Positions 21,404 through 52,001 are shown, counted from the stretch's first letter. The stretch is DNA of 64,000 bases from Octopus sinensis (GCF_006345805.1 NC_043015.1:31496001-31560000); one strand, 5' to 3'. Numbers and translations are program-made. The notes: generated by a model not told the origin, from the sequence alone.

Positions 21404-21688
21404 ATGTGACAACAGAGAAGAACTCTTATGTCGTTGGAGATTCAGTCACTATATACTGTATTTGTACCGACAAAAGTTTGTTACAAGATAGAAACCTGTA
21501 CTTTTTTGACTTGAAAAGTGACAAGCATTTCATCGACTCCAATGAGACAATACTCAATACATCTATTGGTAAAACTGCCATAATACTAACACTGACCAAT
21601 GTTACTGAAGGGAATTACGCAGTTGCTTGTCGTTTGACCAATGATACTGACCAGCTTCGTCTTGGAACAGTTTCCTTTGATGTTGGAT
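21404..21688 (+). CDS. gp130/Domeless-like cytokine receptor gene, exon A (Ig-like domain)
   Basis: Polypyrimidine tract and AG at 21402-03; GTAAGT donor at 21689; phase 1-1. Encodes DVTTEKNSYVVGDSVTIYC...GNYAVACRL...SFDVG with an Ig Cys pair. Confidence 0.9.
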
Positions 21689-22251
21689 GTAAGTAGTTTA
21701 TTATTCATTGTTAATAGTTTTTTTTTCTGTTGTACATATAACTGCGAAAGTATATAACCTAGAGGTTAGAGTGTTTGGCTCATGATCACTAGGTTGTAGG
21801 TTCAATTCCTGGACCAGGTGGTGCATTGAGTCCTGGTGCAAAGGCATTTCATTTCATGTTACTCCTGCCTCCTTGGCAAAATATGTACCCTTTTGCCAAG
21901 TTCTAACAAAAAGTTAGTGAAATATTTATAATGTTTACAGTTGGATAGATAGACAAATATAACAAAATAATTTGACAAAAAATGTGAATTTTTAATTATT
22001 TTCTGAGATTTTACAAAAACAACAAAAATATTATTAAAAAAAAACAACAATGAGCACAAGCCAGGTGTTAGTGCGGCTCTCTTCCTTCGGCTGTTACATC
22101 CTGGATATACCACTGGGTCAATAGTGAGAGACCTGAGAGAGTGGCTGTGTCTGCTTTTGATTACATAGGCACCTAAAACAATTAACAAAAGCATGGTGTA
22201 TGTCATCAAGCCATACTCACTAATGAATGACAGCTGGCTGTACTTTGTACA

Positions 22252-22581
22252 TCTCTCTCTTTATATAAATGGCAAAATGTCTGTCTGTGTGTGTGTCCTT
22301 TATGCAAATCACACTTTCTATGGTCATTCAAAACCGTCCAAGGGTGGTCGTGCACATCTTTACATTTCCCCAGTCATTAAAAAATCAATAGAAGTGACTT
22401 TTTTGTGAATTTTCTATCCAAAACCCAATCAAAATGCCCGAAACTTGATATGCCAATTGAATGCCAGCTAGCTGTATGCGATTGGCCAGAGATTTGGACA
22501 GTACTCGCGTGTATGTGCGCACGCAGCTGTATATGCATGTACTAGCACTATGACCCGGCAATGCCGGGGTCATAGTGCTAG
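22252..22581 (+). mobile_element. Non-autonomous Helitron, 330 bp
   Basis: A|TCTCTCTCTTTATATAAAT 5' end; CCGGC-AAT-GCCGG hairpin; CTAG|T 3' end. Confidence 0.8.
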
Positions 22582-24174
22582 TCTATAATAATTGATAGTA
22601 AAAAGCCCACTGCTGCTAATCACAAGCAAGTATGATTTAGTAGCATGTACTGTCTTTTTAGGTACCTTTATAGTCATGAGCAGACATCAACAGTCTCTCT
22701 GTTTTTCCATCCTTTGCCCTGTGGGACTTTGAGAGTGTCTCAGCTGGAAGGATAGAGCTCTAGGCTGCTTCTTATTTCAGTGGAGTACACTGGAGCAATG
22801 AGAAATGAAGTGCCTTACTCAAGAAATACCTGATAGAGGGATTGAACCCATGACTGCAAGATCTTTAGCTCAATACTCAAATCACTAGGCCATGTTTGTA
22901 TATTAAAATGATTGTTAGTTTTATCTTTTGTGTTCAAATCTCATCGACGCCAACTTTGCTTTGTACAATTAATCGAATTATAAATGAACATGACCCAATT
23001 CATAGAAAAGTCAAACAATAAACGAGGGTGATTTTCAATGTAAAAAAGATATTTGATATTGAAAGCATCAATTTGACATAGAAAAAAGAAACTGGGTTAT
23101 TCAGATAATTCTCAAAATTGGTGTTTATAGTATCTAAAATCACTTTCCTGGTTGAGATATGAAATGATCAGGGAAAGATACTGTGGGATGTGAGGATTGT
23201 AAAATGAGATGGTGTTTGAAAGTGGAATGGGTTAGGAGAGCGCATTCATTGGAAAGCATTGTTTAAGAATGAAAACAGTCTCATTAACTTTTATCAATTT
23301 GACTTTTCTACAAATTGTGGTTACGTTTGTTTATAAATCTGATTAATTATATAAGCCGATCAAAATTTCAAAGAAAATCTTGTAAAAATTTTTCAGGGAA
23401 ATGTTTACAGTTTAAACATTTCAGTAAAATGTTTCGTCTTCTTGGGTAATGTTTTATCATAAAAAATTCCAGTGATATGATTATCAGTGAACTTTAGTTT
23501 AAACGGTTATCAAAATACAAAACTAAAAGCATAAAAGATAAACACGCTCATTTCTAAGAATTCTAACACTGGAATTGATTTTTTTGAGTTCTTTTCACCA
23601 CCACCACCACTGCTGCCGCCGCCACCACCACCACCATTATCATTGTTTAATGTCTTTTTTCCATGCTGGCATGGGTTGGATGGCTTGACAGAAACTGTTA
23701 AGATCAGGGACCATACCTGGTTCCAAAGTCTGTTTTGGCTTGGTTTCTATGGCTGGACACCCTTCCAAACACCAACCACTACACAGAGTGTACTTGGTGC
23801 TTTTATGTAGCACTAATCACCAGTGCTTTTTAAGTGGTACCAGCACCAGTGCTTTTTTAAATTTTTTAATTTGTTCTGGAAGAATTTGATCTGGAAGAAG
23901 AGTCTATGTCCTTAGTCTTTGTAGGCCCTCAGAAACCTGTCTCACTGGTTTCTGAGGGAAAACGGTACTAGGGAAGGAATTCCAAATTGCTAGTATACTG
24001 TGGAAGAATGACTGGAAGAAGCTAGAGCCGTGAACCTAATATTGATATAATTGGTGTGAAGAGAGAAAAATCAAGTGAGTTGGAAATGCGTGAGAAGAGA
24101 TTAAAGTCTACCTGTTTGTTTGTATTATAGGAAAGGATCGTGTGACATTCACACTTTTTCCCAGAGGTATCAGC

Positions 24175-24590
24175 AGTGAGCTGGCAGTATCATTATCATG
24201 CCAGGCGAAATGCTTAGCAGTATTTCGTCTGTCGCTACGTTCTGAGTTCAAATTCCACCGAGGTCGACTTTGCTTTTCATCCTTTCTGGGTCGATTAAAT
24301 AAGTATCAACTATGCACTGGGGTCGATGTAATCAATTTAATCCGTTTGTCTGTCCTTGTTTGTCCTCTCTGTGTTAGCCCCTTGTGGGTAGTAAAGAAAT
24401 AGGTATTTCGTCTGCCGTTACGTTCTGAGTTCAAATTCCGCCGAGGTCGATTTTGCCTTTCATCCTTTCAGGGTCGATTAAATAAGTACCAACTACGCAC
24501 TGGGGTTGATGTAATCAACTTAATCCGTTTGTCTGTCCTTGTTTGTCCTCTCTGTGTTTAGCCCCTTGTGGGTAGTAAAGAAATAGGTAT
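24175..24590 (+). mobile_element. SINE family 2 as head-to-tail tandem, 183-184 bp period
   Basis: Head (G)CAGTGAGCTGGCAG...TTCTGAGTTCAAATTCC...GCCTTTCATCCTTTC; GTAT restarts at 24220, 24403 and 24587. Monomers lie at 29160, 43020, 49195, 50390 (+) and 5780, 36660, 41750, 54420, 54810 (-). Confidence 0.85.
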
Positions 24591-50796: not shown

Positions 50797-50850
<54 letters not shown>

Positions 50851-51143
50851 TAGGTTGATAGAATCATTAGAGTATTGGACAACAGAGCTTATAAAGAGCT
50901 GTATTTACTTACATCTCTTTATAGTCTAAGTTCAAATCTATTCAGGTTTGATTTTCTCTGTCTTTCTCCAGGGATCAATAAAATAAAGTACTGGGTTTAA
51001 TTAAAGTAACTTATTCCCACCAAATCTCAGGGCCTCATACCTATATTTGAAACGCTTATTATTGTTGTTGTTTCAATAATCTTATTTTTATTACAAAACA
51101 TTATTGTTGAAATAATACATTTCTAAATTTTTCAGTGATAGGA

Positions 51144-51612
51144 TGTTGTCAACTTAATGTGACAGCCCCAGGAAAGGGAAGAATGCTACTGTTATTTAGC
51201 CCTAGGAAACACCGTTTCCAGTTGGCTATGTGACACAAGCATACTGTGTCCTTATGTTTTCAAACTGGAGAGATAAGCACCCCCAGCCACCATCCAGAGC
51301 CTAGTTTCAGAGTAATTGCTCTTCATCAGTCTGCAGTAGCTTGACATGCTAGCTGTCAATGCTTATTCACTTTTGAAAACATATAGAATTTCAAATGAAA
51401 TAAATTCACTGATCTACAAAATTAGAAATATTGCATTTCTAAATCTCTTAGAGGGACTTATAAAGTAGCAGCATGACAAAGTGTTCCCCTGTTTGAAAAC
51501 ATAAGGACACAGTACGCTTGTGTCACATAGCCAACTGGAAGCAGTGTTTCCTGGGGCTAAACAGCAGTAGCATTCTTCCCTTTCCTGGGACTGCCACATT
51601 AAGTTGGCAACA
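51144..51612. repeat. Fold-back with about 125-bp arms enclosing a hammerhead motif
   Basis: 51144-51268 is the reverse complement of 51488-51612 (about 90% by eye). Confidence 0.9.
51293..51335 (-). ncRNA. Minimal type I hammerhead ribozyme motif with one core substitution
   Basis: Minus strand TGCAGA-CTGATGA-AGAG-CAATTA-CTCT-GAAA-CTAG-GC-TCTGGA. Stems I, II and palindromic stem III are present; U16.1 is replaced by G. Confidence 0.6.
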
Positions 51613-51663
51613 AACCATCACTTTAACTTTGTTGTTGTTATTCATATTATTTTCTATTTCCAG

Positions 51664-52001
51664 AATCTAACTTGGAGCTTTTCCTCACCATACTCACGGA
51701 CCAGCAACTTTTGGTGAATTGGACACACAACTTCCAGAGCAACCACAGTTTCTTTTATCATGTAGCCATCGAAGGAAAATATTCATACATCGTAAATGCC
51801 ACTCAACAGTTTTTGCTTGATGTCCCATGTTCACTGGACAACGATCAAAATGTTGTCTTACAAGTTTCCATTCAACTTGTTGTGGAGACTGGAATCTTTC
51901 TTCCAGAAGTACGGAAAAATGTTACCATGTGTTCAAATAGAGGATTGAAAACTTTTAAATTATCAGATGAAAATGTGGCATCTAGTTCAGGAGATAGATA
52001 G
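51664..52001 (+). CDS. Cytokine receptor-like gene, exon N (seventh FN3-type domain, reads to TAG stop)
   Basis: TTTCCAG acceptor, phase 1. Encodes ESNLELFLTILTDQQLLVNW...FYHVAIEG...VLQVSIQ...VTMCSNRG...SSGDR*. The 3' boundary is uncertain because there is no GT where the FN3 ends. Confidence 0.75.

What the first reader, a model, noticed from the sequence alone, without database searches (positions are those of the whole stretch)
21404..52001. Unannotated-looking tall cytokine receptor gene (Ig + cytokine-binding module + 5 FN3) with no membrane anchor found: candidate secreted decoy for JAK/STAT signalling
Seen: 14 exons join with canonical AG/GT sites in unbroken phase into about 824 codons. 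Established: Ig, GxPP hinge, two-FN3 cytokine-binding module with a WSxWS-like motif, then membrane-proximal FN3s is the gp130/LIFR/Domeless architecture. Here there are two more FN3s than in gp130. Seen: the last exon reads to TAG, supplied by a GATA/GACA microsatellite. The 5.6 kb before the convergent RDH stop is mostly repeats with no convincing TM or cytoplasmic exon, and AATAAA occurs at 53546 and 53553. Inference: a dedicated soluble ligand trap or co-receptor, analogous to sgp130 or CRLF1, or to the role of fly eye transformer/latran. The ORF track catches only scattered fragments of it.
Basis: partly seen in the sequence, partly recalled or inferred. Interest (0 to 1): 0.8.

Follow-up and report, generated by a model that had tools for sequence, protein, structure and literature searches.

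The report
Secreted gp130/Domeless-like receptor gene in octopus
This octopus gene encodes the complete outside part of a gp130/Domeless-type cytokine receptor but has no membrane anchor or signalling tail, so it is probably a dedicated soluble receptor, a kind of regulator I found no report of in invertebrates.

Summary
The window is Octopus sinensis chromosome CM016877.1. The 14 exons (21404-52001) splice with canonical AG/GT sites and translate exactly to residues 28-851 of RefSeq LOC115222134. That gene is annotated, but only as "uncharacterized protein". A 15th exon carrying the signal peptide lies 379-460 nt upstream of the window.

The protein belongs to the gp130/Domeless "tall" class I cytokine receptor family:
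- The octopod profile matches a protostome Domeless-like profile (hhalign 99.85%, E 6e-31).
- That profile matches gp130 in the PDB (E 8e-49), colinear from the Ig domain to D6.
- The AlphaFold model (pLDDT 78) has eight beta-sandwich domains and superposes on gp130 and IL-12Rb2 ectodomains.

No membrane anchor exists:
- Five octopod orthologues and a spliced RNA contig all stop after ...SGDR/SGDN.
- Nothing between the stop and the convergent SDR gene is conserved with Argonauta.
- More distant relatives carry a TM helix where this protein ends.

dN/dS is 0.16 overall and 0.02 in the last domain plus tail, so the gene is functional.

The decoy role is inference. An agonistic soluble co-receptor role is equally untested. 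I class it as a new variant of a known kind.

The parts
21404..21688 (+). Coding exon 2: Ig-like domain D1 (about residues 28-122; C46 and C103). Intron phases 1/1. Exon 1 (signal peptide MKSYQLLQLLLVLHCYTHGFIFTKMPI) lies outside the window at -460..-379 (L001 10001-10082).
   Evidence: Ig Cys columns conserved across the family; AF2 strands 27-122
28941..29058 (+). Coding exon 3: GYPPE hinge and the first half of cytokine-binding module domain D2. The canonical first Cys pair is absent.
31286..31482 (+). Coding exon 4: second half of CBM domain D2, with a six-Cys loop (C174, C176, C181, C183, C189, C195). C174 and C189 are invariant in the family.
32622..32779 (+). Coding exon 5: first half of CBM domain D3.
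33591..33726 (+). Coding exon 6: second half of CBM domain D3, with YWSDP (a half WSxWS motif, aligned to gp130 YWSDWS).
34708..34799 (+). Coding exon 7: first half of FN3 D4 (NGSY...RRCLTVFWK, aligned to gp130 D4).
36915..37140 (+). Coding exon 8: second half of FN3 D4.
39181..39320 (+). Coding exon 9: first half of FN3 D5.
40098..40248 (+). Coding exon 10: second half of FN3 D5. An alternative donor at 40242 gives isoform X2 (lacks GK).
40955..41125 (+). Coding exon 11: first half of FN3 D6.
43498..43662 (+). Coding exon 12: second half of FN3 D6. TM helices of the six-domain relatives follow this position.
44799..44917 (+). Coding exon 13: first half of FN3 D7 (the only stretch above the Pfam fn3 threshold).
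50170..50347 (+). Coding exon 14: second half of FN3 D7.
51664..52001 (+). Coding exon 15: FN3-like D8 (C795, C829), a 22-residue hydrophilic tail SNRGLKTFKLSDENVASSSGDR, and TAG (51999-52001). This is the most constrained part of the gene (dN/dS 0.024).
52002..53558 (+). Probable 3' UTR, up to the first AATAAA signals (53546, 53553). Its first ~100 nt are colinear with the 3' end of the RNA contig L003. The real poly(A) site is not determined.

Best explanation
The locus is Octopus sinensis LOC115222134, a gene of 15 coding exons spanning about 52 kb.

Shown:
- It encodes an 851-residue protein with a signal peptide, 20 N-glycosylation sequons and eight beta-sandwich domains.
- The domains are an Ig-like domain D1, a two-domain cytokine-binding module (D2-D3, with the GYPPE hinge and YWSDP) and five FN3 domains.
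- The protein ends in a short hydrophilic tail exactly where its relatives begin their transmembrane helix.
- It belongs to the protostome Domeless / vertebrate gp130 'tall' class I cytokine receptor family.
- It lacks the TM helix and the whole cytoplasmic tail. This loss is conserved across octopods, and the gene is under purifying selection.

Inferred:
- The protein is secreted into haemolymph or extracellular space.
- There it binds the still unknown ligand(s) of the membrane-anchored cephalopod paralogues, such as LOC115222231 on the same chromosome.
- Because it cannot recruit JAK, it acts as a ligand trap or buffer that dampens JAK/STAT signalling. This is the role that alternative splicing gives sgp130 in mammals, but here it is hard-wired in a separate gene.
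- The very strong constraint on the last domain and tail suggests an additional conserved contact, for example with the membrane-proximal legs of a signalling receptor.
For: Identity and gene model:
- The window is 100% identical to CM016877.1.
- The spliced exons equal XP_029648127.1 residues 28-851.

Family membership:
- The octopod-only HMM hits TM-bearing cephalopod paralogues (E 1e-32 and 4e-30), Capitella, bivalve, gastropod and Lingula proteins, and tick 'cytokine receptor domeless' (E 1.9e-5) in 1.84 billion proteins.
- hhalign of octopod versus non-cephalopod members gives 99.85%, E 6e-31, 588 colinear columns.
- That non-cephalopod profile matches gp130 at E 8e-49 in one colinear stretch, followed by OSMR, LIFR, IL-12Rb2 and CRLF1.
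- The AF2 model (pLDDT 77.8) has eight domains.
- Foldseek finds full gp130 ectodomains (E 4e-25, TM 0.53) and IL-12Rb2 (TM 0.63).

No anchor:
- No hydrophobic window is found in any octopod orthologue, while the longer, full-length relatives have a TM.
- The protein ends where the Sepia P0049 and P0017 TM begins, after a shared Cys.
- RNA contig L003 reads GDR-TAA and then 3' UTR.
- RefSeq isoforms differ only by GK.
- No block conserved with Argonauta lies between the stop and the SDR gene.
- tblastn finds no remnant of TM or cytoplasmic parts.

Functional gene:
- dN/dS is 0.16 overall and 0.024 for D8 plus tail.
- All 24 Cys are conserved in Argonauta.

Soluble lineage:
- The NJ tree puts the octopod proteins with a 320-aa Ig+CBM-only secreted protein (P0012) at 97% bootstrap, apart from the TM paralogues.
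Against: - No ligand, binding assay or expression pattern is known. No paper mentions the gene.
- The first Cys pair of the cytokine-binding module is missing, and the WSxWS motif is only half present, so ligand binding could be altered or lost.
- The same architecture would suit an agonistic soluble subunit.
- Strong conservation of the stalk and tail is not required for a simple trap.
- Secretion is inferred from the signal peptide and sequons, not shown.
- A rare TM-containing isoform using distant exons cannot be excluded from the data at hand.
Confidence: 0.55

Rival explanations
1. Agonistic soluble receptor subunit. The protein binds a helical cytokine, or is co-secreted with it, and the complex signals through a membrane-anchored paralogue. 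This is how sIL-6R trans-signalling, IL-12 p40, EBI3 and CLF-1/CLC work.
For: - The sister proteins of the octopod clade (P0012 and relatives) are Ig+CBM only. That is the layout of p40 and CRLF1.
- CRLF1 is among the strong PDB matches of the family profile.
- The strong constraint on the whole protein suits a specific obligate partner.
Against: - Known agonistic soluble subunits lack the long FN3 stalk. This protein keeps all five stalk domains, as full-length sgp130, sLIFR and sLepR do.
- No partner cytokine is known in cephalopods.
Confidence: 0.25
2. The protein has left cytokine signalling. It serves another extracellular role, such as adhesion or matrix protein, or pattern-recognition or opsonin-like haemolymph factor. 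Only the fold of its receptor ancestor remains.
For: - The first CBM disulfide is lost, and a clade-specific six-Cys loop is inserted in D2.
- Only half of WSxWS is present.
- The branch is long and identity to the TM paralogues is about 24%.
- The mature protein has an odd number of Cys (23), which would allow covalent partners.
Against: - The same Cys changes are shared by the TM-bearing cephalopod paralogues, which keep a receptor layout.
- Half WSxWS motifs are the rule in the protostome members, including tick Domeless.
- Colinearity with gp130 extends over six domains.
Confidence: 0.13
3. The missing anchor is an artefact. Either the annotation or assembly is wrong at the 3' end, or a TM isoform uses exons outside the examined interval.
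For: - Only short-read-based models and one assembled RNA contig were available.
- The TM paralogues span more than 100 kb, so distant exons are possible in this genome.
- The O. bimaculoides orthologue is visibly mis-annotated, being split into two genes.
Against: - The C-terminus is the same in four genome assemblies and one RNA contig.
- The tail is conserved in frame up to the stop (dN/dS 0.03).
- No strong donor lies before the stop.
- There are no N's.
- No conserved downstream block exists, and the SDR neighbour at about 5.5 kb is conserved in Argonauta.
Confidence: 0.05
4. It is a decaying remnant (pseudogene) of a receptor that lost its 3' exons.
For: It lacks the parts needed for signalling.
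Against: - The 851-codon frame is intact in five taxa.
- dN/dS is 0.16.
- All Cys are conserved.
- The gene is transcribed and correctly spliced.
Confidence: 0.02

Closest known systems
Vertebrate gp130 (IL6ST) and its natural soluble form sgp130
   Same: - The N-terminal six domains share order and fold: Ig D1, then CBM D2-D3 with a G-x-PPE hinge and YWSD, then FN3 D4-D6.
- As in sgp130, the whole ectodomain is present without a TM helix or JAK-binding tail.
   Different: - sgp130 arises from the receptor gene by alternative splicing, polyadenylation or shedding (my knowledge). Here a separate gene encodes only the soluble form.
- This protein has two extra FN3 domains.
- The first CBM disulfide is missing, and the second WS of WSxWS is absent.
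- The ligand is unknown.
Arthropod Domeless and the lophotrochozoan Domeless/'IL6R'-like receptors
   Same: - These are the closest sequence relatives outside cephalopods. Tick Domeless is hit directly, and hhalign gives 99.85%.
- They share the half WSxWS motif (WSD/E).
- Eight-domain ectodomains also occur in Capitella, P0017 and Sepia.
   Different: - The full-length members of that group have a TM helix and long cytoplasmic tails, most with a short hydrophobic-P-D/E motif 15-25 residues after the TM (my reading of the listed sequences, not statistically tested).
- The octopod protein has neither.
Drosophila Eye transformer/Latran (short negative co-receptor)
   Same: It is a non-signalling paralogue of the JAK/STAT receptor that down-regulates the pathway (PMC2914635, PMC4751595).
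   Different: - Et/Lat is membrane-anchored, has a short ectodomain and does not bind ligand. It heteromerises with Dome (PMC4751595).
- The octopus protein is anchorless and keeps the full ectodomain.
Soluble class I receptor subunits CRLF1, EBI3 and IL-12 p40
   Same: - They are germ-line encoded, secreted class I receptor-like proteins without a TM.
- CRLF1 is a strong PDB match of the family profile.
- The cephalopod sister protein P0012 has the same Ig+CBM layout.
   Different: - They have no FN3 stalk, or only one FN3 domain.
- They act as parts of composite cytokines (agonists), not as traps.

Membership tests
gp130/Domeless-type 'tall' class I cytokine receptors | Significant sequence homology, colinear over several domains, to named family members | tested here: met
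   - Octopod HMM to tick 'cytokine receptor domeless': E 1.9e-5.
- hhalign A1 versus A4: 99.85%, E 6e-31, 588 columns.
- A4 versus gp130: E 8e-49, then OSMR, LIFR and IL-12Rb2.
gp130/Domeless-type 'tall' class I cytokine receptors | N-terminal Ig-like domain followed by a two-FN3 cytokine-binding module joined by a proline hinge | tested here: met
   - AF2 domains 27-122, 127-222 and 233-321.
- GYPPE aligns to gp130 GFPPDKP.
- Foldseek to gp130 D1-D3, 1i1r: TM 0.58.
gp130/Domeless-type 'tall' class I cytokine receptors | Four conserved cysteines (two disulfides) in the first CBM domain | tested here: not met
   - The second pair is kept (C174 and C189 are invariant columns).
- The first pair (C-x9-C-x-W) is absent in all cephalopod members, TM-bearing ones included, but present in the other protostome members.
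- A clade-specific six-Cys loop is present instead.
gp130/Domeless-type 'tall' class I cytokine receptors | WSxWS motif in the second CBM domain | tested here: inconclusive
   - YWSDP is at the homologous position, aligned to gp130 YWSDWS. The second WS is missing.
- The same half motif is seen in the protostome relatives, including tick Domeless (ELWTDD).
gp130/Domeless-type 'tall' class I cytokine receptors | Three or more membrane-proximal FN3 domains | tested here: met
   - Five FN3 domains follow the CBM, from exon pairs with phase-1 borders and the AF2 model.
- D4-D6 are colinear with gp130 D4-D6.
gp130/Domeless-type 'tall' class I cytokine receptors | Single TM helix and a cytoplasmic tail with a Box1-type JAK-binding motif | tested here: not met
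   - No hydrophobic segment after the signal peptide in any octopod orthologue.
- The stop comes 22 residues after the last domain.
- So the protein is an ectodomain-only relative, not a signalling receptor.
Soluble (decoy or co-receptor) class I cytokine receptors | Signal peptide, no anchor, extracellular hallmarks | tested here: met
   - Exon 1 encodes MKSYQLLQLLLVLHCYTHG.
- There are 20 NxS/T sequons and paired Cys per domain.
- The C-terminal 19 residues are disordered and hydrophilic, so no GPI-type signal. No dedicated predictor was run.
Soluble (decoy or co-receptor) class I cytokine receptors | Binds the ligand of a signalling receptor and changes its signalling | not testable with these tools
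   This needs binding and reporter assays. The ligand is unknown.

The most novel reading that the evidence does not exclude
Cephalopods carry an old, dedicated lineage of germ-line encoded soluble gp130/Domeless paralogues. It would include the eight-domain octopod protein described here and a 320-residue Ig+CBM protein in other (unidentified) cephalopod transcriptomes. This lineage split from the membrane-anchored receptors before those taxa diverged. It would be the first soluble class I cytokine receptor system described in an invertebrate. It would regulate JAK/STAT signalling from outside the cell, either as a ligand trap or as part of a composite cytokine.
Probability: 0.4. Interest if true: 0.65.

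Novelty: new variant of a known kind. Interest (0 to 1): 0.5.

Why it matters
Extracellular control of JAK/STAT signalling by soluble receptors (sgp130, sIL-6R, p40, CLF-1) is regarded as a vertebrate elaboration. The known invertebrate brake, fly Et/Lat, works in the membrane.

A conserved, selected, anchorless full-ectodomain paralogue in octopods would show two things. First, the soluble-receptor strategy arose independently in a protostome. Second, it arose by gene duplication and loss of the 3' exons rather than by splicing or shedding.

It also has a practical use. The recombinant ectodomain is a ready-made bait to fish out the still unknown ligand of the molluscan Domeless/'IL6R'-like receptors. 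The identity of that ligand is an open question in the recent literature (PMC13203501).

Tried and rejected
- Pfam on the protein alone gives only one fn3 hit.
- The PDB sequence search with the three-sequence octopod profile gives only generic FN3 hits and a weak G-CSFR match at E 0.13. A family profile was needed.
- AF2 with three close orthologues failed (pLDDT 33). It worked with 16 diverse relatives.
- The search for homologous proteins with the family alignment returned only the octopod proteins plus generic NCAM and contactin hits, and no names. With P0012 it returned only unnamed RNA-derived proteins. The species of the short form therefore stays unknown.
- Exon 1 was sought in the window and not found. 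It lies upstream of it.
- tblastn of TM and cytoplasmic parts of five relatives found no remnant in the window.
- A hydrophobic stretch at 52095-52154, in the frame of the last exon but behind three stops, was considered as a fossil TM. I rejected it because it is T-rich UTR, has no basic flank and is not conserved in Argonauta.
- BLAST of the last two domains alone against relatives is not significant (E 0.15 to Sepia). Their homology rests on colinearity and two shared Cys.
- The chromosomal distance to the TM paralogue could not be obtained.
- My guess that the ORFs at 7300-8356 (-) are a hAT transposase got no Pfam support.
- The Cephalopod-only profile against the PDB ranks generic FN3 proteins first. 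Cytokine receptors follow at E 6e-9 to 2e-7.
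Full report
WHAT IS THERE

The window is 100% identical to Octopus sinensis chromosome CM016877.1 (GCA_006345805.1). Window position x equals L001 position x+10461.

I rebuilt the gene model from stop-free segments and splice sites. A first protein search then returned RefSeq 'uncharacterized protein LOC115222134 isoform X1' (851 aa, P0001). 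With two short exons added, 14 window exons (21404-52001) splice through canonical AG/GT sites in consistent phase. They translate exactly to residues 28-851 of P0001, which is 824 codons plus TAG.

The missing 27 residues are a signal peptide, MKSYQLLQLLLVLHCYTHGFIFTKMPI. A first exon 379-460 nt upstream of the window encodes them. Intron 1 is therefore about 21.8 kb long.

Domain borders fall on phase-1 introns:
- One exon encodes the Ig domain.
- Six exon pairs encode the next six domains.
- One exon encodes the last domain plus the tail.

Isoform X2 uses a donor 6 nt upstream (40242) and lacks the residues GK.

IS THE MISSING ANCHOR REAL?

Yes, on every test I could run.

1. The orthologues all end ...SSSGDR or ...SNSGDN, and none has a hydrophobic segment. 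These are O. vulgaris, O. bimaculoides, Argonauta hians (850 aa, 73% identical) and an RNA-derived protein from another octopus.
2. The RNA contig L003 comes from SRR3401912, an octopus metatranscriptome (PMC11662614). It is colinear with all 15 exons at the same junctions. It reads GDR-TAA and then continues into sequence colinear with the genome after 52001. The stop position is therefore ancestral. O. sinensis merely has a few extra AGAT/AGAC units there, too short for Tandem Repeats Finder.
3. Between the stop and the last exon of the convergent short-chain dehydrogenase gene, nothing is conserved between Octopus and Argonauta. This holds at DNA and translated level, although both flanking exons are conserved and the spacing (about 5.5 kb) is kept.
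4. tblastn with the TM and cytoplasmic parts of five relatives finds nothing in the window.
5. The window contains no N.

A rare isoform that uses distant exons cannot be formally excluded.

IS THE GENE ALIVE?

Against the other octopus, dN/dS is 0.16 over the whole coding sequence. The last domain plus tail is the most constrained part, at 0.024. All 24 cysteines are conserved in Argonauta, and there are 20 N-glycosylation sequons. This is a functional gene for an extracellular protein.

WHAT FAMILY?

Pfam sees only one fn3 domain. The three-sequence octopod profile finds only generic FN3 proteins in the PDB.

An exhaustive HMM search of 1.84 billion representatives with the octopod profile gave 35 hits. 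The multi-domain, colinear ones are:
- the O. sinensis paralogue LOC115222231 (1019-1043 aa, same chromosome);
- O. bimaculoides LOC106877106;
- a Sepia pharaonis protein mis-named PTPRQ;
- Capitella, bivalve, gastropod and Lingula proteins;
- tick 'cytokine receptor domeless' (E 1.9e-5).

The longer, full-length ones among these have a TM helix and a long cytoplasmic tail. Most also carry a short hydrophobic-P-D/E motif 15-25 residues after the TM. That is the place of gp130 Box1. This is my reading and is not statistically tested.

I then separated the links of the chain:
- The octopod-only alignment against an alignment of nine non-cephalopod members gives hhalign probability 99.85%, E 6e-31, with 588 colinear columns from the Ig domain to the sixth domain.
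- That non-cephalopod profile matches gp130 in the PDB at E 8e-49 in one colinear stretch (positions 10-623 against residues 13-597). OSMR, LIFR, IL-12Rb2 and CRLF1 follow (similar with the pooled profile).
- A cephalopod-only profile reaches LIFR (6e-9), IL-12Rb2 and the gp130 CBM (2e-7) among generic FN3 hits.

Structure prediction agrees. With the 16-sequence alignment, AlphaFold2 gives pLDDT 77.8. The model has a signal-peptide helix, eight beta-sandwich domains and a disordered tail from residue 833. A three-sequence alignment had failed. Apart from titin (TM 0.14), the best Foldseek matches are complete gp130 ectodomains (E 4e-25, TM 0.53 over about 635 columns) and IL-12Rb2 (TM 0.63).

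Two hallmarks deviate:
- The first disulfide pair of the CBM is absent in all cephalopod members, and a six-Cys loop is present instead.
- WSxWS is reduced to YWSDP, as in the protostome relatives generally.

WHERE THE PROTEIN ENDS

In the family alignment, the eighth domain lines up with the membrane-proximal domain of the eight-domain relatives (Sepia P0049, P0017, Capitella P0037). The alignment includes two shared cysteines (C795, C829). In Sepia P0049 and P0017 the TM helix follows within about 10 residues of the second Cys. In the octopod protein a 22-residue hydrophilic tail and the stop follow.

The protein is therefore a complete ectodomain with the TM and cytoplasmic exons gone. Two extra FN3 domains are not a peculiarity of this gene. 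Homology of the last two domains rests on colinearity and these cysteines, because BLAST on those domains alone is not significant.

EVOLUTION

A neighbour-joining tree (200 bootstraps, crude) gives these groupings:
- All cephalopod members form one clade (100%).
- One branch (89%) holds the TM receptors: two octopus paralogues and Sepia.
- The other branch (97%) holds the octopod anchorless proteins together with P0012.

P0012 is a 320-residue protein with a signal peptide, an Ig domain and a CBM only. It is found in at least eight RNA-seq samples. Its own stop is followed by an 850-nt AT-rich 3' UTR ending near AATAAA.

The species of P0012 could not be determined. A related product, P0083, ends earlier and may be an incomplete assembly.

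The data therefore suggest an old anchorless lineage. Its age is not established.

HOW IT MOST LIKELY WORKS

Shown:
- It is a secretory-pathway protein.
- It has a full gp130/Domeless-type ectodomain.
- It has no TM helix and no JAK-binding tail.
- It is under purifying selection.
- TM paralogues exist in the same genome.

Inferred:
- It is released and binds the ligand(s) of the TM paralogues.
- Because it cannot signal, it acts as a trap or buffer, as sgp130 does in mammals.

I put about 0.55 on this, and 0.25 on the opposite sign: a soluble agonistic subunit of the sIL-6R, p40 or CLF-1 kind. The Ig+CBM-only sister protein makes that rival plausible. The retained and strongly conserved five-domain stalk fits the sgp130, sLIFR and sLepR type better. 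It also hints at a contact with the legs of a signalling receptor.

Lesser rivals are:
- a function outside cytokine signalling (0.13);
- a hidden TM isoform (0.05);
- a pseudogene (0.02, effectively refuted).

COMPARISON WITH WHAT IS KNOWN, AND NOVELTY

The gene model is already in RefSeq, so the gene as such is not new. Its family assignment and its anchorless nature are not recorded. All its names are 'uncharacterized', and no paper cites the locus.

Recent work on molluscan 'IL6R'/Domeless homologues speaks of membrane-anchored receptors and an unknown ligand (PMC13203501). The known invertebrate negative receptor, fly Et/Lat, is membrane-bound and does not bind ligand (PMC2914635, PMC4751595). 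My searches found no report of a soluble Domeless-type protein in an invertebrate. That is absence of evidence within an open-access library.

I class it as a new variant of a known kind: a germ-line encoded soluble tall cytokine receptor in a protostome. Interest is moderate (0.5). It is not a new principle, but it is a clean, testable case, and it offers a bait for finding the missing ligand.

Noticed in passing
upstream of window: L001 10001-10082 (= window -460..-379): The first coding exon (signal peptide) of the gene lies just outside the window. Intron 1 is about 21.8 kb and fills window 1-21403.
   Followed up: yes
window 40242 / 40248: Two GT donors 6 nt apart (CAG|GTAAAG and AAG|GTACGT) give RefSeq isoforms X2 (849 aa) and X1 (851 aa), which differ by the residues GK.
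   Followed up: yes
window 57596-58204 and 60809-61213, minus strand: This is a convergent two-exon short-chain dehydrogenase (adh_short, RDH-like, 339 aa). The same neighbour sits about 5.5 kb downstream of the orthologue in Argonauta hians, so the synteny is conserved.
   Followed up: partly
window 11142-11545, 44977-45338, 55483-55886 (and L001 3908-4322): An interspersed repeat of about 400 bp at 85-88% identity occurs in several copies, in introns and in the intergenic region (SINE-like). It is not classified.
   Followed up: no
window 46193-46507: A near-identical (99.4%) direct duplication with an offset of about 146 nt lies inside intron 13.
   Followed up: no
window 20459-20759, minus strand: A Tc1/mariner-type transposase remnant lies in intron 1 (DDE_3, E 6e-5, below the Pfam threshold). 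Microsatellites flank it.
   Followed up: partly
window 7300-8356, minus strand (and 7433-8206 plus strand): Two adjacent ORFs (187 and 134 aa) lie on the minus strand, with a 258-codon open frame opposite them, inside intron 1. There is no Pfam match. It may be a degraded mobile element.
   Followed up: partly
window 52095-52154: A hydrophobic stretch (ITLPFLVLLFLIAEIHCGLI) lies in the same frame as the last exon but behind three stop codons. It is T-rich UTR and not conserved in Argonauta, so it is probably chance rather than a fossil TM.
   Followed up: partly
P0001 residues 46-829 (window exons 2-15): The mature protein has 23 cysteines, an odd number, and all are conserved in Argonauta. 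At least one could be free or form an intermolecular bond. Six of them cluster at residues 174-195 in a cephalopod-specific loop of the first CBM domain.
   Followed up: partly
L004-L012 (RNA contigs, species unknown): A 320-aa secreted Ig+CBM-only protein (P0012) is the closest relative of the octopod protein (37% identity). Its own stop is followed by an 850-nt 3' UTR, and it is seen in at least 8 RNA-seq samples. A related 296-aa product (P0083) ends earlier and may be an incomplete assembly.
   Followed up: partly
O. bimaculoides orthologue (P0003, P0008, P0010): The O. bimaculoides orthologue is split into two RefSeq genes (LOC106875392, 370 aa; LOC128250031, 445 aa). An older 804-aa model lacks the exon-8 equivalent and reads into an intron. 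This looks like an annotation or assembly problem there, not biology.
   Followed up: no
Sepia pharaonis CAE1300530.1 (P0049): This eight-domain, TM-bearing member of the gp130/Domeless-like family is named 'PTPRQ' in the record. The name is probably wrong, because the listed sequence shows no phosphatase domain.
   Followed up: no
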